A stretch of DNA of 64,000 nt from positions 248,001-312,000 of IMG/VR virus record IMGVR_UViG_3300033145_003233; one strand, 5' to 3'. The notes under the pieces were generated by a model. It worked only from the letters and a program-made list of their open reading frames with translations. It was not told the DNA's origin and searched no databases. This document shows, in pieces, positions 6,604-43,643 of this stretch. Positions within the stretch are counted from its first letter, which is position 1, and each line of letters begins with the position of its first letter. The translations under genes and the position numbers were made by a program.

Positions 6604-7182
6604 TTACTCTATTTTTCCTATTTTCGAATAATAGTATAGAATTCCCCAAGCCTTAGCTCCAACCTTCTTCCCCGAACCTAATAGCTTATTAATGTCGTCT
6701 ATATCATAAAACAACACTTCTATATCCTCACTATCTTCTTGATCAGTATAACTAATTTCTCCCGCTGCCTTTGCAAACACAATAACACATGATTCATCAC
6801 AAATACCAGGAGAAGAATAAATAGGGCAACTTACATCTGTAATTTCTGTAATATCTAGACCAGTCTCTTCCTTCAATTCTTTAATAGCGGTTTCTGCTAT
6901 ATCTTGCCCCTCTTCTATCAATCCAGCAGGGAATCCATATTCACATCCTCCAATAGCGACTCTATACTCTTTTGTAATAACAAGTCTTCTACCAGTAGGA
7001 GTATCTACAATAGGAGCAATAACAACAGCATCAACACTTGGATCTGCAATAGGATGTTCTTTTCTGGAAACAAAAGTCCATTCTACAGTATTTAATTTAG
7101 CATTAATATATTTCACAAAAAATAAATTAATCCATTTGTTATCTGTAAGTTTTTTAAGTTGTAATATTTTTCTCAAGTTCAT
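6604..7182 (-). CDS. NUDIX hydrolase (ADP-ribose pyrophosphatase-like)
   Basis: Nudix box PAGLIEEGQDIAETAIKELKEETGL; YSSPG. Confidence 0.9.
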   Translation of the reverse strand: MNLRKILQLKKLTDNKWINLFFVKYINAKLNTVEWTFVSRKEHPIADPSVDAVVIAPIVDTPTGRRLVITKEYRVAIGGCEYGFPAGLIEEGQDIAETAIKELKEETGLDITEITDVSCPIYSSPGICDESCVIVFAKAAGEISYTDQEDSEDIEVLFYDIDDINKLLGSGKKVGAKAWGILYYYSKIGKIE

Positions 7183-8489
7183 CTGTCCATTTCTTCCAAT
7201 AACTTTTTATAACGATTTCTATAGTTAGCACTCAAGTGATCTATCTTTTCAGATAACATTATCTCAAATAATTCATCTGGATCAAAATTAGCTAACTTGG
7301 CAAGACCAAGAATCAAGAGAGGAGTAGGAGTGTAGCTCCCTCCTTCGCTTCTTGCCACATTAGAAACACTCACATTTACCTCCTTACATAAAGATAGCTG
7401 ACTTTTCCCTATTGAGGTTCTTTTATTTTTTATATAAGCAGACGTTTTTTTAAAATTCCATCCTATTCCCTTAGAAGTTCCCTCATCAAAACGGAAGGCC
7501 CACCCTCTATTATCTTTCAATTCTCCCTTTTTATATTTATCAAATACTATTCTATGTTTATAATCATACCATCTTACCCTATCAGATAAAACCATCTCAT
7601 AAATAGGCTCTAAATTTAAAAATAAAGAATTACATAATCTATATATCATCATTTGGCCAGGCAGATTCCATGAAAGACAGATACTCCTTATAAGATGAGG
7701 ATGAACTCCTATCAACTTTGACTGCTCTCCGTATGTTAATCCTCGAATTGCTTCTAAGTAAAATACAGAAAAATCAGATTGAAATTCTTCATCCCTCAAT
7801 AATACTGTGTGAGGACAAGAAACATTATCTCTATGATAAGATTTAATTAATTTTATAACTTCATCTTTATCATCTTGCTTCTCCCTGTAATACTCCATAT
7901 ATTCAGCCACTTTTTTTTCTGCATGAGCCACATAGCATTTTATCTTCTCTAATAATTGCATATGAAAGAGATCATATGGGTTAATCTTCAAACATTTAGA
8001 TATAGCAAAAATCTTCTTTAAAGGTAAACTTTTTCTACCAGCTTCTATAGATAAAAGTTCCCTCCTCTCCATCCCCATTATCTTGAGAAAATTTATTATA
8101 GTCAGAGATTGCTCAACTCTCCTATTATGTATATATCTCCCAGTTTTTTTTAATTTTAATGAAACTTTACCTCGAGAATTAGAAGTAGAAAAAAAGATAC
8201 AATTATAAGGGTTCTTGCTAAAATCTCCCTTCTTTTTATAATCCTTATAAAAAAGAACATTCTCTTTAGCAAATCTTTTAGACCATTCTATTATAATAGA
8301 TTGGCAAAAAGATGGCGGATCAATACCCATAGCTTGTGCTATGTGAAAAGCCTTATGAATAGAAGGGATGATCTCTCCTTTTTCTGTCCTCAATATAACA
8401 TCAGGATGAACTCCAGATATCTTAAAAAGATCTTTAAGTGTCCATCCCTTAGAGATTCTTTGAGAACGTACTAGTTCGGCTACATTCAT
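7179..8489 (-). CDS. Transcriptional regulator with multiple XRE-type HTH repeats
   Basis: Repeated XRE-like segments (VRSQRISKGWTLKDL..., IHNRRVEQSLT..., IKNKRTSIGKSQLSL...E.G). Confidence 0.7.
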   Translation of the reverse strand: MNVAELVRSQRISKGWTLKDLFKISGVHPDVILRTEKGEIIPSIHKAFHIAQAMGIDPPSFCQSIIIEWSKRFAKENVLFYKDYKKKGDFSKNPYNCIFFSTSNSRGKVSLKLKKTGRYIHNRRVEQSLTIINFLKIMGMERRELLSIEAGRKSLPLKKIFAISKCLKINPYDLFHMQLLEKIKCYVAHAEKKVAEYMEYYREKQDDKDEVIKLIKSYHRDNVSCPHTVLLRDEEFQSDFSVFYLEAIRGLTYGEQSKLIGVHPHLIRSICLSWNLPGQMMIYRLCNSLFLNLEPIYEMVLSDRVRWYDYKHRIVFDKYKKGELKDNRGWAFRFDEGTSKGIGWNFKKTSAYIKNKRTSIGKSQLSLCKEVNVSVSNVARSEGGSYTPTPLLILGLAKLANFDPDELFEIMLSEKIDHLSANYRNRYKKLLEEMDR

Positions 8490-9085
8490 CTGCTAACAAA
8501 ATCCTCAACAACATATCCATTTTCATCTACATAGTTTTTAATTCTTCCCGCCATGTTATTAATAATTTGTCTAATTCTCTCTCTACTATAATCCAATACA
8601 TCTGCTATTTCAACCATTTCCATTCGTTGCTCATAATAATAATATTTGATTTGCTCTTCTAATGGGCTTAATTCAATTCTGTCAAACAAAAACTCTAAAT
8701 CTCCCCACTCAACAAATGGCTTATATTTCTCTCGTATAGGGCGATAATGGTATCCATATTCTTCTTCGCTTTCTCCAGCAAATTCAAAACCCATTATTTT
8801 AAATCTATCTTCCCACCTACTACGTAAATCTATATAGATAGAGAACCCTGTTCTAAAAGCAAATTTTGCATAGGTAGAAAATTTCACACCCCTAGACGGA
8901 TCATATTTCTCAGCGGCCATACACAAAAACCATATTAAATGACCAGCAACATCATCAATTTCGGGAGGCCTTATTTTTCCGCGATTTAATAACGTTTTTA
9001 TATACCACCATACCAAATTGATATTATCAGCAGCTAGTTGTTTTTGTTCTTCCGTTAAATAATGTTGTCCATAGGGTCTTCCCAT
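8486..9085 (-). CDS. Sigma-70 family RNA polymerase sigma factor
   Basis: DNINLV, KYDPSRGVKFSTYA (region 2); EIADVLDYSRERIRQI (region 4). Confidence 0.85.
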   Translation of the reverse strand: MGRPYGQHYLTEEQKQLAADNINLVWWYIKTLLNRGKIRPPEIDDVAGHLIWFLCMAAEKYDPSRGVKFSTYAKFAFRTGFSIYIDLRSRWEDRFKIMGFEFAGESEEEYGYHYRPIREKYKPFVEWGDLEFLFDRIELSPLEEQIKYYYYEQRMEMVEIADVLDYSRERIRQIINNMAGRIKNYVDENGYVVEDFVSR

Positions 9086-9091
9086 TTCATC

Positions 9092-9664
9092 CTAATCTCT
9101 TATATAAAAATCATTTTTCAATAAACTCCGCGACCTTATAATCCTTCTTAGCTTATTCAGCATCTCCATTATAATTTGCTGAATTCTTCTCCCACTAAGA
9201 TCATATTTCTTTCCCAGTTTTTCCTGAGAAATCTTATGAGAATAATATTCTATCAATATCTTTTTATCTCTTTCTTTAGCATTTATGCCATCAAGAAGTT
9301 CATATAGAAAATCTTTTTTAACCTCTGTTTTTTTAGCATCCTGAACAACACTTTCCTCAAGATAACGAATGTGGGATGAAGAACAAAAATTATATCTATC
9401 AAATTTTTCTTTCTCTTTCCCATAAATTTGTGCTATGCTTTTATTAAACCCCCAATAAGCATAAGTAGAGAACTTAGTTCCATAATCTTCATCATATTTC
9501 GAGGCAGATATACAAAAATTCAAACAAAGATCACTAATTAAATCATCCTTCAAATGAGGAAATATAAATTCTTTTTTCCTCAAATCCGAAATAAAACCTG
9601 TTAACAATCTAATATTATTAGTTACTAATTTCTGTTGTTTTTTTGTTAATCTCGTTCTGCTCAT
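9092..9664 (-). CDS. Sigma-70 family RNA polymerase sigma factor (paralog)
   Basis: KYDEDYGTKFSTYA; SQEKLGKKYDLSGRRIQQI. Confidence 0.8.
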   Translation of the reverse strand: MSRTRLTKKQQKLVTNNIRLLTGFISDLRKKEFIFPHLKDDLISDLCLNFCISASKYDEDYGTKFSTYAYWGFNKSIAQIYGKEKEKFDRYNFCSSSHIRYLEESVVQDAKKTEVKKDFLYELLDGINAKERDKKILIEYYSHKISQEKLGKKYDLSGRRIQQIIMEMLNKLRRIIRSRSLLKNDFYIRD

Positions 9665-11537: not shown

Positions 11538-11563
11538 AATTTCTCCCCTAAATATGTTTTTAA

Positions 11564-11909
11564 TGGAGCCGGACGCATCGAAGCGTCGTCCACTGTAGCT
11601 TTAAATCAAACATCTACATGCATAGTTAGTTATTTAGGTTTCGCAAATCAAATCCAAACTAACATGGTTTATCATCGCTATCTCAAATTAGTTTCGCATC
11701 ATATTCTCTTGAGAAAAAGAATATTCAACTATCCTGTTGTCGTGCTTGCTTCCCTAACAGGAGTCAGGAGCAAACAGCCTAAATTGGCTTAGGCAGCCAT
11801 TGCGTAACTGTTGCCAGTTAAAGCTTTTTAGTAGATTTTTACTGAGCCAACTACTATCTCAGGCATGCAATCCAATTCTCTATTCTACGTGTCGATACCT
11901 TTCGACCCC
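11564..11909 (-). ncRNA. ssrA: tmRNA; tag peptide (A)GNSYAMAA* at 11789-11815
   Basis: 5' GGGGTCG pairs with 3' CGGCTCC-A including G3.U70; T-arm GACGC-TTCGAT-GCGTC; resume context TTAACT-GGC; tag ends AA-stop; GCATGC helix; no encoded CCA. Confidence 0.93.
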
Positions 11910-11932
11910 TTTTAATTTTTTAAAGAACAAAA

Positions 11933-12176
11933 ACGTCAATACATTAGACAGGATTGGCTTATTACACCATCTCTAAGAGCAAAGTGCAACTCTCCGCTAC
12001 CCGCTAAGATTTCTGGCTTGCCTACGCGCCTGACTACCAGATGCCCTCTATACCATTGGTCAATTTTTATACCCACTGTTTATTAAACTCTTAACCCTCA
12101 CCTTGTGGGCTAATAACGGGGTCGGAGCTTTTCAAGCGGTTCAATGTGTCGCACCACATCACCAATGTATTAACAT
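11933..12176 (-). ncRNA. Unassigned ~244-nt structured RNA
   Basis: No ORF; GC-rich relative to flanks; 15-bp terminal stem ATGTTAATACATTGG/CTAATGTATTGACGT; several internal hairpins; loop-loop complementarity; consensus promoter immediately upstream. Confidence 0.7.
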
Positions 12177-12189
12177 TTTAATTATCGGT

Positions 12190-12217
12190 ATTATACCAGA
12201 AAATTATCACTTGTCAA
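12190..12217 (-). promoter_or_regulatory. Consensus sigma70 promoter for the ncRNA/tmRNA unit
   Basis: TTGACA-AGTGATAATTTTCTGG-TATAAT. Confidence 0.85.
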
Positions 12218-12219
12218 GT

Positions 12220-12612
12220 CTAAAAAGCATAAACTTTTTCTAAATCTGAAGATGACGGCATTTTCTGATAAATTTCCCCTCTTGGCCCAACAAAATTAGG
12301 GCCTTGCCTTCTTAATTTTACAGTTTGTTGAGAACCATTACTGTTAGTAATCCATATAACCACTGTATTTTGCTCTGCTCTAATTTCTTCTATTTCACTT
12401 CTAATATTTTCCTTATCTTTTTCACTTCCTATTGCATATCCAATAGCTGCCCCAACAACGGCCCCTTCTTCGCCTCCAGCTATAGCTCCTATAATTGCTC
12501 CTGTTGCTGCTCCATTTTGAGCCTCATTATTACATCCAGCCACAACTATTAAAAAGAATAAGGCTATTGCCAAAATCCATAATAATTTTCTAAGTTCACT
12601 TTTTTCTTCCAT
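12220..12612 (-). CDS. Glycine-zipper lipoprotein
   Basis: VVAGC lipobox; GAATGAIIGAIAG...GAAIGYAIG; C-terminal WITNSNGS...GPRGE. Confidence 0.75.
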   Translation of the reverse strand: MEEKSELRKLLWILAIALFFLIVVAGCNNEAQNGAATGAIIGAIAGGEEGAVVGAAIGYAIGSEKDKENIRSEIEEIRAEQNTVVIWITNSNGSQQTVKLRRQGPNFVGPRGEIYQKMPSSSDLEKVYAF

Positions 12613-41117: not shown

Positions 41118-43643
41118 TTATACCTCCGCCACAATCAAAGATAAAACAGCAGTATCTTCTATCATGTCAAAAACTTCTTTCCTAAGTTTTTCTTTATTAT
41201 CTGGATTCCATATAATCCTAACTTGAGTACCCTTGATATCATCTACTTTTCCATATTCTTGAGGATTAGCCATCCCCTTCCTTCTGTCTCTTACCCTCAT
41301 ACCTACTTGATATTGAGGAAGAGCTTCTTTCGGACCTTTCACAATTTCTGTTTTATCTTGATATAACTTATCAATAGCCTCCGGTAAAACTTGTGACAAT
41401 TTTACTTGCTTAAACCAATTCCCTGACATTAGCGGCTCCCTATATTTATTAATTATTTCTGGGGCCATCGCATGGACGGCCTGAGTAGCTTGAACTTTAG
41501 AATTCTCAAAAACATTTTGTTTCTCATTCCCGTCTGGCATAGTAGCAAAACTCATATCAATCTTGCCAGTATCTTGAAGCTCTTTAAGTCTATTTAATAC
41601 TTCTTTTATATAACCAGTAGAAGGACTTAAAACAGGAGTAAGAGTAGAAAATATATTTATTATATCACTTCCATTTATCACTGTTCCTCGAAATATCCCA
41701 GTTGGACTTTCTACAAAATTACTAAAATTTTCAAAGAATTTAGTATGTTTTTCTTCATTATAATTATCTGGTTGAGATGCCATATCATCAGCTTGAACAT
41801 GATACAAAACGTACTTCCATAAGTCTTTATGTTCTTCATCTTTACCATGCATTCTTGTATCTCTTAAAAATCTACCCCTACCTTTAGGCCCCCACTTATC
41901 AGCAGAATGAGGACGCATATGTAATCTTATAACCTGATTAACTATATCTCTCTCATCTCTACCAACACCAATAGATTTAAGGATCTGATTTGCCATCTTA
42001 GTAGATGCTCTCTCGTGATCTATATATTGCATCTGTTCCACATTCTTAGGATGAGGCTTCTGCACACCACCTTTCATCTTTCCAAAATCATGAAATAAAG
42101 CAGCAAGATTCATAAGGCCCCTCATATGATCACTTTCTCCATTATCTTGCATTATCTTATTCATATTTTTTACAACTTCTAAAGTATGATCTAATAAATT
42201 ATATTTATGATAAGGAGTTTGTTGATTCATCATTATACCTTCAGGATGCAAATCATCCATTTCAGGAACTTTAAATGCTGACTTATATAAACCAGTACTA
42301 AATAATAATTTAAGAGAATCAACTGGATTTCCCATTAACATCTTCATTAATTCTGGTCCAGCTCTTTCAGAAGCTACCTTCTTACTATATGATTCATGAA
42401 TAGAAGGATCTCCCATTGCCTTAACAATAGAATCATCAATTACGCTATTAGGAAAACGACTATGAAAACGCAAAACTCTCAAAAGCCTAAGAGGATCTTC
42501 ATGAAAAGTTTTATATGATTCATCTGGAGTTCTTAAAACTATTTGACCATCTCCCTCTATCCCCAAATCTTTTTTCCCGCCAACAAAATCATCTACCTCA
42601 CCTGTATCTATATTATAATAAAGAGCATTGATAGTTAAATCTCTTCTTCTAACATCTTCCTTGGGATTATTTGTAGTAGTAATTTGTGGTTGACGACTAT
42701 TGGGATCAGGATAATGCTCTGTTCTCATTGGAACAAATTCTATTTTTTGGCCGAATAAATCAACTGCTCCAACCATCAACTTATCATCAGGAGCTTTCTC
42801 TAATGGATCAGCAGATTTCTCCAAACTTACCTTATATGCTTTAGAAACATCAATTATATTATGCCTAACGGCTGCTTCAGCAACTAATTGAGCGAAATCA
42901 TAACCAGGCATATCAATAGCTATATCTATGTCATCACTAGGTATCCCCAATAACTTATCTCTCACCCATCCACCAGCTACTCTCATTTGAATATTAAGCC
43001 CGTGTCCTTTTTTAACTGTCTTTAAAAACTCAAATATGTTTTTCTCCTTAGGAGTAAGAGATAATTCAGAATGACCCCCGATTACTCTCTGCCCCTTTTT
43101 AAAAACCTTCTTCCCAGTAGTAGATAATCTAGAAGTAGGAAAAGAGAGACCAGGAACACTATTAGAAACCAAACACTCCACACCGATATCAAATTCTTCT
43201 ACTATATTTTTAACCGAGTCAAAAGATCCCATAGCAGCAGGCTCATTAACAATAATTCTTATAAGAGAATCAGATATATCTAACTCTTCTGCAAAGTTTA
43301 GTTGCAATCCCCCAAAGCGACTCTTTTCAGCCCCTGTTTTTTGAGAATCTAGTACTAAAAATATAGAATACTCTTTAAAATATTTATCAGCAAACCTCTG
43401 AGAAAACAGAGGAATAGGACTAAAAAAAGATATCTTATTCTTAATTAAAAAACCTCTTAAGTCTATAATATCACAAGGAAAAACCATATGTCTTGTAGGC
43501 AAGAAAGCAGCAAGGTCATCAATTAATCTGTCCGAACAATCAGCCACATAGGAAAATAATGACCTAAATCTTTGCAAACAGGATAAAATAACATCCTTAT
43601 CCACGTTTATTGGATCTCCTCTTATTTCTCGAACAACCCCCAC
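41118..43643 (-). CDS. cca: CCA tRNA nucleotidyltransferase with HD domain and N-/C-terminal extensions
   Basis: GGWVRD, DDIDIA, RRDLTINA, DPLRLLR, ERAGPEL, LFHDFGK. Confidence 0.9.
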   Translation of the reverse strand: MGVVREIRGDPINVDKDVILSCLQRFRSLFSYVADCSDRLIDDLAAFLPTRHMVFPCDIIDLRGFLIKNKISFFSPIPLFSQRFADKYFKEYSIFLVLDSQKTGAEKSRFGGLQLNFAEELDISDSLIRIIVNEPAAMGSFDSVKNIVEEFDIGVECLVSNSVPGLSFPTSRLSTTGKKVFKKGQRVIGGHSELSLTPKEKNIFEFLKTVKKGHGLNIQMRVAGGWVRDKLLGIPSDDIDIAIDMPGYDFAQLVAEAAVRHNIIDVSKAYKVSLEKSADPLEKAPDDKLMVGAVDLFGQKIEFVPMRTEHYPDPNSRQPQITTTNNPKEDVRRRDLTINALYYNIDTGEVDDFVGGKKDLGIEGDGQIVLRTPDESYKTFHEDPLRLLRVLRFHSRFPNSVIDDSIVKAMGDPSIHESYSKKVASERAGPELMKMLMGNPVDSLKLLFSTGLYKSAFKVPEMDDLHPEGIMMNQQTPYHKYNLLDHTLEVVKNMNKIMQDNGESDHMRGLMNLAALFHDFGKMKGGVQKPHPKNVEQMQYIDHERASTKMANQILKSIGVGRDERDIVNQVIRLHMRPHSADKWGPKGRGRFLRDTRMHGKDEEHKDLWKYVLYHVQADDMASQPDNYNEEKHTKFFENFSNFVESPTGIFRGTVINGSDIINIFSTLTPVLSPSTGYIKEVLNRLKELQDTGKIDMSFATMPDGNEKQNVFENSKVQATQAVHAMAPEIINKYREPLMSGNWFKQVKLSQVLPEAIDKLYQDKTEIVKGPKEALPQYQVGMRVRDRRKGMANPQEYGKVDDIKGTQVRIIWNPDNKEKLRKEVFDMIEDTAVLSLIVAEV

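What the first reader, a model, noticed from the sequence alone, without database searches (positions are those of the whole stretch)
11933..12217. Unassigned ~244-nt structured RNA with a kissing-loop pairing, upstream of tmRNA
Seen: an ORF-free, GC-enriched block starts just after a TTGACA-16-TATAAT promoter. Its ends form a 15-bp helix (12162-12176 with 11933-11947). A second long-range helix pairs CTCCGACCCCG (12117-12127) with CGGGTAGCGGAG (11992-12003) and encloses further hairpins. The loop GGTGCGA (12149-12155) is complementary to TTGCACT (11983-11989) in a distant hairpin, giving 7 bp with G.U pairs. One hairpin, GTCAGG-CGC-GTAG-GCA-AGCC (12015-12034), loosely resembles SRP helix 8. 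I cannot match the RNA to RNase P, 6S or a canonical SRP RNA. Inference: a compact, tertiary-folded phage RNA, probably co-transcribed with tmRNA and possibly acting on the ribosome or in protein targeting.
Basis: partly seen in the sequence, partly recalled or inferred. Interest (0 to 1): 0.8.

Follow-up and report, generated by a model that had tools for sequence, protein, structure and literature searches.

The report
New structured RNA beside megaphage tmRNA
A roughly 250-base non-coding RNA with its own strong promoter, and a fold kept intact by compensating mutations in related giant phages, lies just upstream of the phage's tmRNA gene; it matches no described RNA family and its function is unknown, although its neighbours point towards translation.

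Summary
The window is part of a 548-kb megaphage contig. On the minus strand, a perfect TTGACA-16-TGgTATAAT promoter drives an ORF-free stretch of about 250 nt (about 12183 to 11925). This stretch ends 16-24 nt before a full-length tmRNA gene. Rfam gives no hit, even at E<=10.

I found two true homologues in syntenic contigs (L021, L033; neighbouring peptidase 59-62% identical). Both have the same promoter.

- **Structure:** RNAalifold on the three sequences gives 59 pairs, 17 of them with changes on both sides. The energy is -44.4 against -17.5+-3.4 for column shuffles (0 of 200 reach it).
- **Confirmed:** the 15-bp terminal helix, with 6 compensatory pairs and no mismatch.
- **Rejected:** the long-range CTCCGACCCCG/CGGGTAGCGGAG helix, the "kissing loop" (not conserved, and at chance level even in the window), and the "SRP helix 8" hairpin, which lies in a variable region.
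- **Revised fold:** a multi-helix junction with tRNA-like topology and six invariant motifs.
- **Context:** in relatives the same locus holds arrays of other small RNAs separated by a 15-nt spacer motif. One of them is a near-copy of 23S rRNA helices 43/44.

Function is unproven. My best guess is a trans-acting RNA of the phage's translation take-over module.

The parts
12190..12217 (-). Sigma-70-type promoter: -35 TTGACA (12217-12212), 16-nt spacer with extended -10 TG (12198-12197), -10 TATAAT (12195-12190). The inferred start is near 12183.
   Evidence: 12/12 match, TG present. The same TTGACA-17-TGaTATAAT stands in front of both homologues (alignment A2).
11925..12183 (-). The whole non-coding RNA ("type A"), about 250 nt. 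The core closed by the terminal helix is 12176-11933.
   Evidence: No ORF. Homologues L021 5902-6146 and L033 2018-2271 (nhmmer E 2.5e-26 and 7.4e-28). Consensus fold far better than shuffles.
12162..12176 (-). P1, 5' strand of the terminal helix. It pairs with 11947-11933.
   Evidence: 15/15 pairs in the window. The 11 shared pairs are kept in all three sequences, and 6 of them change on both sides.
11933..11947 (-). P1, 3' strand of the terminal helix, followed directly by a U-rich tract (11932-11921).
12142..12161 (-). Hairpin A: a 7-bp stem (12161-12155 / 12148-12142) with loop GUGCGA, separated from P1 by zero to two nucleotides depending on how the stem's base is drawn (RNAalifold, pairs it directly after P1). 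The loop begins GUGYGA in all homologues.
   Evidence: The stem covaries (GAUGUG/CACAUU against GGUGCU/AGCACU).
12073..12139 (-). Domain P2-P3: P2 is CCGCU/AGUGG (12139-12135 / 12077-12073). P3 is AAGCUC/GAGUUU (12130-12125 / 12090-12085). P3a is ACCC/GGGU (12122-12119 / 12097-12094). The internal loops carry the invariant motifs UGAAAAGC and GUUUAAUA.
Evidence: P2 has 3 of 5 pairs changed on both sides and P3 has 2 of 6.
12040..12057 (-). P4 hairpin (AAUG/CAUC) with a 10-nt loop, GUAUAGAGGG here. The consensus GGUAYNGAGGGC (including the closing pair) is nearly invariant.
   Evidence: Its 3' strand can alternatively pair with 12017-14 or with CGGA of the 22-nt block; this is unresolved.
12014..12039 (-). 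P5 (UGG/CCA) closing a variable hairpin.
   Evidence: The sequence is not conserved among homologues. No SRP model hit.
11991..12012 (-). Invariant 22-nt block AAAUCKUAGCRGGUAGCRGAGA. Its GCRGG (12004-12000) is the 5' strand of P6.
Evidence: Identical in all three apart from K and R positions.
11948..11990 (-). A variable hairpin (11990-11960) followed by the invariant AGCCAAUCCUG. P6 3' strand CCUGU (11952-11948) abuts P1 with no spacer (a T-arm-like position). An inner GC/GC pair joins 11997-96 with 11958-57.
   Evidence: P6 and the inner GC pair recur in a shorter relative of the family at L024 2515-2675 and in "type C" of L017.
11916..11930 (-). Spacer motif TTGTTCTTTAAAAAA (consensus TTGYTCTTTRAAAAA), lying between the RNA and the tmRNA.
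   Evidence: One exact copy in the 64-kb window. It recurs before every small-RNA unit and before the tmRNA in L017, L019 and L021.
11561..11909 (-). Phage tmRNA gene. The tag reading frame gives GNSYAMAA by eye. CCA is not encoded.
   Evidence: Rfam RF00023, 105.6 bits, full length. ARAGORN misses it.

Best explanation
**Shown**
The interval is a gene for a stand-alone structured RNA of about 250 nt on the minus strand. It belongs to a family not described in Rfam.
- It has its own consensus sigma-70 promoter with an extended -10. That is the kind of promoter a host RNA polymerase uses without phage factors, so I expect early, strong expression.
- Its fold is under selection. A 12-15-bp terminal helix closes a junction of five further arms: hairpin A, P2-P3, P4, P5 and P6.
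- Six sequence blocks in the loops and junctions do not change.
- The layout has the topology of a tRNA: a terminal stem, then a short hairpin directly or within two nucleotides of it, a large central domain, and a 5-bp arm stacked directly onto the 3' strand of the terminal stem.

**Inferred**
- The terminal stem and its U-rich tail define and protect the ends of a stable RNA. This RNA is released either by termination or by cutting at the conserved spacer motif.
- The invariant junction and loop blocks form a binding surface (or, less likely, a catalytic core).
- I think the RNA acts in trans as part of the phage's translation take-over set. It occupies a dedicated "RNA island" that always ends in the phage tmRNA.
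- In relatives, that island carries interchangeable small RNAs, including a mimic of the 23S rRNA GTPase-associated centre.

The most likely mode of action is binding or titrating a host or phage protein of the translation or RNA-processing machinery.
For: - **Promoter:** 12/12 match with TG, conserved in both homologues. In those two, the predicted start falls on the first base of P1.
- **Homologues:** L021 and L033, with nhmmer E 2.5e-26 and 7.4e-28. Both lie in a syntenic block: SSB, AAA ATPases, DNA methylase, dCMP deaminase, C1 peptidase, then the RNA island, then two sigma factors.
- **Structure:** RNAalifold gives 59 pairs, 17 changed on both sides, and energy -44.38. Two hundred column shuffles give -17.5+-3.4 and 5.8+-2.3 (maximum 12) such pairs; none reaches the real values. 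Sliding the partners by 1-3 columns drops canonical pairing from 95% to 33-41%. The reverse complement folds worse, at -28.3.
- **Not coding:** no conserved ORF.
- **Family and topology:** a 150-nt relative in L024 and units B and C in L017, L019 and L021 share P1, the YG linker, the hairpin, and the ...AAUCCUGY arm abutting P1.
- **Island context:** tmRNA lies downstream in every locus. The spacer motif stands before each unit. Unit G matches 23S rRNA 1054-1088 at 32/34 positions, z = 20, and it covaries between L017 and L033.
Against: - There are only three full homologues, so the covariation counts cannot be turned into R-scape-style significance.
- There are no expression data, so the ends, abundance and processing are all inferred.
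- The link to translation rests on neighbourhood alone. The RNA's profile has no similarity to E. coli rRNA or to any Rfam family.
- The relation to units B and C rests on short shared motifs only; the profile HMM does not detect them.
- tmRNA occurs without this RNA in L017, L019 and L034, so the two are not obligate partners.
- The P4/P5 region has two or three mutually exclusive pairings that all fit the three sequences.
Confidence: 0.5

Rival explanations
1. It is a cis-acting leader: a riboswitch-like or protein-dependent attenuator. Formation of P1 next to the U-rich tract would stop transcription, so the element would gate read-through from the strong promoter into whatever lies downstream.
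For: - It is promoter-proximal in all three loci, with the start at or near P1.
- The P1 3' strand is followed at once by UUUUUGUUCUUU, GUUCUUUG or GUUUUU.
- The downstream cargo differs: tmRNA in the window, other small RNAs in L021, and an 88-aa ORF with a ribosome-binding site in L033.
- The P4 3' strand has alternative, mutually exclusive partners that all fit the data.
Against: - A helix closing about 220 nt is not a normal intrinsic terminator, and the scan calls none there.
- No riboswitch or T-box model matches.
- Shorter units that share its end motifs (L024, B, C) sit inside arrays without a promoter of their own.
- The downstream genes share no function that one ligand would sensibly control.
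Confidence: 0.15
2. It is a ribozyme. The invariant junction blocks would form a catalytic core, for example for self-processing of the polycistronic RNA island at the spacer motif.
For: - Its size and architecture fit: a multi-helix junction with stems that covary around strictly invariant unpaired blocks, including a 22-nt one.
- A conserved 15-nt motif lies at every unit boundary.
Against: - No known ribozyme family matches.
- The arrays in L017 and L019 have the same spacer motif but lack this RNA.
- Nothing here tests for cleavage.
Confidence: 0.1
3. It is merely the long 5' leader of the tmRNA precursor, acting as a folding or processing scaffold with no function of its own.
For: - It lies 24 nt upstream of the tmRNA on the same strand (23 nt between them).
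- No strong promoter stands between them.
Against: - In L021, two other RNA units (about 390 nt) separate it from the tmRNA. In L033, an ORF plus a 430-nt RNA do so.
- L017, L019 and L034 have the tmRNA without it.
- Unrelated phage tmRNAs (L015, L016) have a coding gene directly upstream.
- Conservation of 17 compensated pairs is not expected of a disposable leader.
Confidence: 0.05
4. It is a highly diverged copy of a known universal RNA: SRP RNA, RNase P RNA, 6S RNA, a group I intron, or a tRNA with an insertion.
For:
- The ends have tRNA-like topology.
Against: - Rfam's 4227 models give nothing at E<=10 on the window copy or the L021 copy.
- The SRP-like hairpin is not conserved.
- ARAGORN finds no tRNA.
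- P1 is 12-15 bp rather than 7. The T-like loop lacks UUCRANY, and no CCA is present.
Confidence: 0.04

Closest known systems
tRNA and the tRNA-like domain of tmRNA
   Same: - The order of elements matches: a terminal (acceptor-like) stem, then a short hairpin (D-arm position) separated from it by at most two nucleotides, and a 5-bp arm (T-arm position) stacked on the 3' strand of the terminal stem with no spacer.
- Like tmRNA, a large functional insert takes the place of the anticodon arm.
- It lies next to a tmRNA gene.
   Different: - The terminal stem is 12-15 bp and A/U-rich.
- There is no CCA or discriminator context, no G3-U70, and no D-loop GG.
- The T-like loop is UA...CAAU with an inserted hairpin rather than UUCRANY.
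- Neither ARAGORN nor the Rfam tRNA or tmRNA models detect it.
Small stable RNAs of unknown function encoded in phage tRNA clusters (T4 species 1 and 2 RNAs, rnaC/rnaD).
   Same: These are phage-encoded stable RNAs of more than 100 nt that sit among translation-related RNA genes. They have paired ends and presumably are released by processing.
   Different: No sequence relation was tested or is expected. The present RNA is larger, has its own consensus promoter, and has a 170-nt conserved core.
Large orphan structured RNAs of phages and bacteria (GOLLD, ROOL, raiA motif, HEARO)
   Same: These too are complex multi-helix RNAs with invariant junction nucleotides and unknown function. Several are phage-borne and lie near tRNA genes (from my own knowledge).
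   Different: All of them are Rfam families, and none matches. This RNA is smaller than GOLLD or ROOL and is known from only three contigs.
   Same: Only the local string GUCAGG...AAGCC in the window copy.
   Different: The hairpin lacks the GNRA tetraloop and the AGCA side of the symmetric loop. It is not conserved in L021 or L033, and no SRP model hits.
rRNA-mimicking regulatory RNAs (ribosomal-protein operon leaders such as the L10 and L1 leaders)
   Same: In relatives, the same RNA island contains a unit that copies 23S helices 43/44, and possibly one resembling the L1 stalk. A decoy role for the island as a whole is therefore conceivable.
   Different: The RNA under study shows no rRNA similarity itself. 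It is also not upstream of a ribosomal-protein gene.

Membership tests
SRP RNA (Rfam Bacteria_small_SRP / Bacteria_large_SRP) | Covariance-model score at or near the gathering threshold | tested here: not met
   No SRP hit at E<=10 on window 11850-12300 or L021 5880-6540.
SRP RNA (Rfam Bacteria_small_SRP / Bacteria_large_SRP) | A conserved helix 8 with a GNRA tetraloop and symmetric/asymmetric loops (the Ffh-binding site) | tested here: not met
   The candidate hairpin 12034-12015 has loop GUAG and lacks AGCA. The segment differs in sequence and length in L021 and L033.
tRNA / tRNA-like | Detection by a tRNA finder or the Rfam tRNA model | tested here: not met
   ARAGORN finds nothing in the window or in L017, L019, L021 or L033 apart from the tmRNA of L033. 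Rfam gives none.
tRNA / tRNA-like | Cloverleaf topology: acceptor stem, 2 nt, D-arm ... T-arm directly joined to the acceptor 3' strand | tested here: inconclusive
   The topology is present in all family members. However, the stem lengths and loop sequences (no UUCRANY, no D-loop GG, no CCA) are not those of tRNA.
tmRNA | Rfam tmRNA, alpha_tmRNA or tmRNA_permuted models; a tag reading frame | tested here: not met
   Only the adjacent gene 11909-11561 matches. There is no second or permuted piece in 11925-12185.
RNase P RNA, 6S RNA, group I/II introns, known self-cleaving ribozymes, phi29 pRNA, GOLLD/ROOL/raiA/HEARO | A covariance-model match (all are Rfam families) | tested here: not met
   Nothing at E<=10.
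Riboswitch / T-box leader | A match to a known aptamer class, plus a separate terminator/antiterminator or RBS-sequestering platform upstream of a regulated gene | tested here: not met
   No aptamer model hit. No canonical terminator was called. The downstream genes are unrelated to one another. Ligand binding cannot be tested with these tools.
rRNA mimic (as for unit G of relatives) | Significant local similarity to 16S, 23S or 5S rRNA that recurs at the same place in the homologues | tested here: not met
   The profile HMM against the E. coli rrnB operon gives a best E of 2.7 over 17 nt. The best local alignments of the three copies hit different rRNA regions. The positive control, unit G, gives z = 20.
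Conserved structured ncRNA (generic) | Homologues with compensatory base changes beyond the null, strand asymmetry, and no conserved ORF | tested here: met

The most novel reading that the evidence does not exclude
The RNA is one cartridge of a modular, phage-encoded "RNA island". In this island, tRNA-shaped scaffolds display different decoy domains, including copies of ribosomal RNA sites such as the uL11/L10-binding GTPase-associated centre. Together with the phage tmRNA, the cartridges would reprogramme or protect the host translation apparatus. On this reading, the 170-nt conserved core of this cartridge binds a translation or RNA-processing protein that no known RNA mimic targets.
Probability: 0.2. 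Interest if true: 0.85.

Novelty: new variant of a known kind. Interest (0 to 1): 0.62.

Why it matters
Giant phages carry many translation-related genes, but their non-coding RNAs other than tRNA and tmRNA are almost unexplored.

- **A new RNA.** This is a complex-fold RNA of about 250 nt with a consensus early promoter and clear compensatory evolution. It has no relative in Rfam or in GenBank phages.
- **A variable RNA locus.** It sits in a locus where related phages swap in other small RNAs, one of which copies the 23S rRNA site that binds uL11/L10 and the translational GTPases.
- **If the cartridges are decoys or scaffolds.** They would then reveal a new layer of phage control over ribosomes or RNA processing.
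- **Tractability.** The RNAs are small and well defined, and could be studied by pull-down and structural work.

Even if the function turns out to be mundane, the corrected secondary structure and the three-sequence seed are enough to start a family model.

Tried and rejected
1. **Known families.** I ran Rfam at gathering score on the whole window and at E<=10 on the locus and on the L021 copy. Only tmRNA and chance hits appeared (SpF41 at E 2.9).
2. **GenBank phages.** blastn with the window, L021 and L033 copies found nothing, even at E<=10.
3. **IMG/VR scans.** Scans with a 20-mer, two conserved-block patterns and a family-wide 3'-module-plus-spacer pattern returned only the source contig.
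4. **Metagenome and GTDB scans.** These returned only the SDBT01 contigs I already held, plus chance hits inside coding genes.
5. **Synteny through the flanking 140-aa lipoprotein.** This gave only two short ENA contigs of no use.
6. **More distant peptidase relatives (45-49% identity, L003-L007).** These have neither the RNA nor a tmRNA nearby.
7. **Upstream regions of other phage tmRNAs (L011-L016).** No similar RNA is present; coding genes abut the tmRNA.
8. **An rRNA-mimic hypothesis for this RNA.** Rejected.
9. **A coding hypothesis, including recoded stops.** Rejected: all three stop codons end long ORFs in the window, and no conserved frame exists.
10. **RNA-RNA duplex prediction against the cognate tmRNA.** The unrestricted duplexfold output was uninformative, so I dropped it.
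11. **Sarcin-ricin-loop resemblance of the P4 loop.** Considered by eye and dropped: there is no GAGA tetraloop, no counterpart of A2665, and no LSU model hit.
12. **Unretrieved contigs.** Two Logan contigs that probably hold further homologues (those of P0006 and P0016) could not be retrieved because the sample files were too large.
Full report
**Where we are.** The window is part of IMG/VR contig IMGVR_UViG_3300033145_003233, which is 547,943 bp long. It has 34% G+C, nearly all genes lie on the minus strand, and all three stop codons are in ordinary use. Genes around the finding include a C1 peptidase, dCMP deaminase, a DNA methylase, two sigma-70-like factors and an HTH protein. Further away lies an 841-aa tRNA-nucleotidyltransferase-like protein. 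A full-length tmRNA gene lies on the minus strand at 11909-11561 (Rfam RF00023, 105.6 bits). ARAGORN does not call it.

**Checking the observation.** On the minus strand there is a perfect promoter: TTGACA, 16 nt, TGgTATAAT (12217-12190). It scores 12/12 and has the extended -10 TG. From about 12183 to about 11925 no reading frame is open on that strand. G+C is 0.41-0.44 against 0.34 overall. The 15-bp helix 12176-12162 / 11947-11933 is there. Rfam finds nothing for the interval, either at gathering score or at E<=10. On its own, the sequence folds only slightly better than shuffles (-72.0 against -64.2+-4.9 kcal/mol, z = -1.6). The opposite strand folds worse than its shuffles (z = +0.9). The window alone therefore cannot decide whether the structure is real.

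**Finding relatives.** Direct DNA searches failed. GenBank phages gave nothing, and an IMG/VR 20-mer scan returned only the source contig. The flanking 140-aa lipoprotein has almost no relatives. The C1 peptidase 450 nt upstream was more useful. Its closest homologues, at 59-66% identity, lie in clearly syntenic blocks: SSB, AAA ATPases, methylase, deaminase, peptidase, a gene-free gap, then two sigma factors. These blocks are on contigs from deep-sea sediment (SDBT01, Loki's Castle), from Logan assemblies and from ENA assemblies. Each gene-free gap ends in a tmRNA. nhmmer then found two true homologues of the RNA: L021 5902-6146 (E 2.5e-26) and L033 2018-2271 (E 7.4e-28). Both follow the peptidase gene directly. 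Both are preceded by TTGACA-17-TGaTATAAT, and the predicted start falls on the first base of the terminal helix (alignment A2). Further scans of IMG/VR, the JGI metagenomes, GTDB genomes and GenBank phages used blocks conserved in all three copies. They returned only contigs I already held, or chance hits in coding genes. The family is therefore rare in current data.

**The structure.** RNAalifold on the three sequences (alignment A3) predicts 59 pairs, and 17 of them have at least one sequence changed on both sides with the pair kept. The consensus energy is -44.38 kcal/mol. As a control I shuffled alignment columns within classes of equal gap pattern and conservation, 200 times.
- Shuffled energy was -17.5+-3.4 (minimum -26.4).
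- Shuffled counts of doubly changed pairs were 5.8+-2.3 (maximum 12).
- No shuffle reached the real values.
- Sliding the 3' partners by 1-3 columns lowers canonical pairing from 95% to 33-41%, and the number of fully kept, doubly changed pairs from 14 to 0-2.
- The reverse-complement alignment folds to only -28.3, which fixes the strand.

An independent enumeration of every helix of 4 bp or more that all three sequences keep at homologous columns ranks the same helices first.

**The helices, in window coordinates.**
- **P1:** 12176-12162 / 11947-11933. Six of the eleven shared pairs change on both sides and none is broken.
- **Hairpin A:** 12161-12155 / 12148-12142. The loop always begins GUGYGA.
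- **P2:** 12139-12135 / 12077-12073 (CCGC/GUGG, CACG/CGUG and CCAU/AUGG in the three copies).
- **P3:** 12130-12125 / 12090-12085 (AAGCUC/GAGUUU, AAGCCUC/GAGGUUU, AAGCCAG/CUGGUUU).
- **P3a:** 12122-12119 / 12097-12094.
- **P4:** 12057-12054 / 12043-12040, with the near-invariant loop GGUAYNGAGGGC.
- **P5:** 12039-12036 / 12017-12014, closing a variable hairpin.
- **P6:** 12004-12000 / 11952-11948 (GCRGG/CCUGY), with an inner GC/GC pair and a second variable hairpin. Its 3' strand abuts P1 with no spacer.

Between the helices lie blocks that do not vary: UGAAC, UGAAAAGC, GUUUAAUA, the P4 loop, the 22-mer AAAUCKUAGCRGGUAGCRGAGA, and AGCCAAUCCUG.

**What fails.**
Its 3' strand is part of the invariant 22-mer, while the 5' strand drifts without compensation and is partly deleted in L033. 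Those bases belong instead to P3/P3a and P6.
- The "kissing loop" keeps 7/7, 1/7 and 2/7 pairs at homologous columns, and its partner lies in a variable hairpin. A free search finds only 6-bp runs in L021 and L033, which 40% and 92% of shuffles reach. In the window itself, 35% of shuffles give a run of 7 bp or more between that loop and the rest of the molecule.
- The "SRP helix 8" hairpin sits in the variable P5 apex.
- One point stays open. The 3' strand of P4 can pair with the P4 5' strand, with the P5 3' strand, or with CGGA of the 22-mer. Each alternative is compatible with the three sequences.

**The neighbourhood is an RNA island.** A 15-nt motif, TTGYTCTTTRAAAAA, follows the RNA in the window at 11930-11916. 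It occurs there and nowhere else in the 64 kb as an exact match. In the relatives it precedes every unit of an array of small RNAs, and it also precedes the tmRNA in L019 and L021. The arrangements are:
- **Window:** promoter, A, motif, tmRNA.
- **L021:** promoter, A, motif, B, motif, F, motif, tmRNA.
- **L033:** promoter, A, an 88-aa ORF, motif, G, tmRNA.
- **L019:** ORF, motif, D, motif, B, motif, tmRNA.
- **L017:** ORF, motif, E, motif, D, motif, C, motif, G, tmRNA.

Each unit is closed by its own terminal helix. Units B and C, and a 150-nt unit at the end of L024, share end modules with A. These are P1, two nucleotides (YG), a short hairpin (in C and L024, GCGU-GUGUGAA-ACGC), and at the 3' end ...AGCAGG...AAUCCUGY running straight into P1. 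The L024 unit carries AGCAGG-UA-GC-GGGUAAU-GC-CAAU-CCUGU, which confirms P6 and its inner GC pair. This is the connectivity of a tRNA, or of the tRNA-like domain of tmRNA, with a large insert in place of the anticodon arm. The stem lengths and loop sequences are not those of tRNA, however, and no tRNA finder reports them. The profile HMM of A does not detect B or C, so this wider kinship rests on short motifs and topology only.

**Function.** What is shown:
- The promoter is of the type host RNA polymerase uses unaided.
- The RNA is under strong structural selection and is not coding.
- It is a recurring but dispensable occupant of a locus that always ends in the tmRNA.

What is suggestive: unit G of L017 and L033 begins with a near-copy of 23S rRNA 1054-1088, which is helix 43, the uL11 site of the GTPase-associated centre. 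The match is 32/34 positions with z = 20, and the Rfam LSU model gives a local hit at E 0.11. Unit G ends with the helix 44 loop GCGUAAUAGCAC. Its helix 43 stem covaries between the two phages (GGC/GCC against GGA/UCC). Units D and B give borderline matches to the L1 stalk and to 16S 346-375 (z = 4.2 each).

The island therefore looks like a collection of translation-related RNAs. I tested directly whether A is also an rRNA mimic, and it is not. The best local alignments of the three copies hit different rRNA regions, and the profile HMM finds nothing in the E. coli rrnB operon.

My best explanation is a stable, trans-acting RNA whose invariant junction blocks bind a protein of the translation or RNA-processing machinery. 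P1 and the U-rich tail or spacer motif would define and protect its ends. I put about 0.9 on [quoted passage not shown]. I put about 0.3 on the translation-related trans-acting mechanism. The reported confidence of 0.5 is for the combined statement.

The rivals are a P1-dependent attenuator (0.15), a ribozyme (0.10), a tmRNA leader (0.05) and a diverged known RNA (0.04). The remainder is "something else".

**Novelty and literature.** No Rfam 15 family matches. A large survey of candidate structured RNAs in IMG/VR required at least three matching regions (PMC10690425), and this RNA has a single IMG/VR locus, so it is unlikely to be in that set. Searches for papers on megaphage tmRNA loci or phage rRNA mimics found nothing relevant. 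The comparison with the T4 species 1 and 2 RNAs comes from my memory only (searches gave no text).

**Verdict.** It is an undescribed RNA family of unknown function in an interesting, modular RNA locus of giant phages.

Noticed in passing
L017 6922-7358 and L033 2570-2998 (relatives); also GenBank AP018399.1 150244-150606 (XacN1), JN882285.1 289502-289794 (GAP32), OR258281.1 about 312945, MK813943.1 about 75085, MZ092003.1 about 83977: This is a 230-430-nt unannotated RNA-like unit. It opens with a near-copy of 23S rRNA helix 43 (GGCUUAGAAGCAGCCA...UUUAAAGA) and closes with the helix 44 loop (GGCGUAAYAGCACAC). A variable insert lies between them, and a terminal stem closes the whole. In the megaphage relatives it sits directly in front of the tmRNA. 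In XacN1 it follows a 2'-5' RNA ligase gene and ends in a canonical terminator. It has no Rfam family. It looks like a widespread, undescribed phage mimic of the uL11/L10-binding GTPase-associated centre. It is not present in this window.
   Followed up: partly
window 11916-11930 (-); L017 6504, 6664, 6907; L019 6391, 6667; L021 6302, 6515; L033 2554: The 15-nt motif TTGYTCTTTRAAAAA stands 1-9 nt before every small-RNA unit and before the tmRNA, in the position where unit A has a sigma-70 promoter instead. It could be a phage-specific promoter (two phage sigma factors are encoded a few genes away) or an endonuclease processing site. I did not resolve this.
   Followed up: partly
L019 6406-6505, L017 6679-6775 (unit D); L019 6520-6660, L021 6165-6301 (unit B): Unit D has a borderline match to the 23S L1-stalk region 2100-2127 (AGCCUGAUGAGGAUAGGUGG). 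Unit B has a borderline match to 16S 346-375 (GGAGCAGAGUGGGGAAU...). Both give z = 4.2, which is suggestive only. Unit D also contains CUGAUGA, but no hammerhead model hit appears.
   Followed up: partly
window 11561-11909 (-) and 41118-43643 (-): The tmRNA scores 105.6 bits in Rfam, yet ARAGORN misses it. Its 3' end reads CUCCAUUA, so CCA is not encoded. The window also encodes an unusually long (841 aa) tRNA-nucleotidyltransferase-like protein that could add CCA.
   Followed up: no
L006 4710-5342 and 6477-6656 (IMGVR_UViG_3300037247_001786, 461 kb): In this more distant megaphage, the C1 peptidase gene is split. Residues 12-227 and 225-284 of the query match 1.1 kb apart on the same strand, which suggests an intervening element such as an intron, an intein or a mobile insert.
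   Followed up: no
window 7179-9664 (-): Two tandem sigma-70-like genes (regions 2 and 4) lie next to a 436-aa protein with two HTH domains. This trio is conserved downstream of the RNA island in all syntenic relatives.
   Followed up: no
L033 2290-2556; L019 6115-6387; L017 6222-6500; L020 3508-3780: A conserved ORF of about 90 aa with no Pfam match (motif ...IGEDW...HWCGSQ...) lies immediately before the small-RNA arrays in relatives, and directly after unit A in L033. It is a possible protein partner of the island. I did not look for it in the window; the three small window ORFs I scanned against Pfam matched no family.
   Followed up: partly
L010 (ENA ERZ23499165, sample ZINK19-1_SAMN08473126): A 586-bp contig encodes an 89%-identical copy of the lipoprotein downstream of the tmRNA. 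A close relative of this phage therefore exists in that sample, but the contig is too short to reach the RNA.
   Followed up: no
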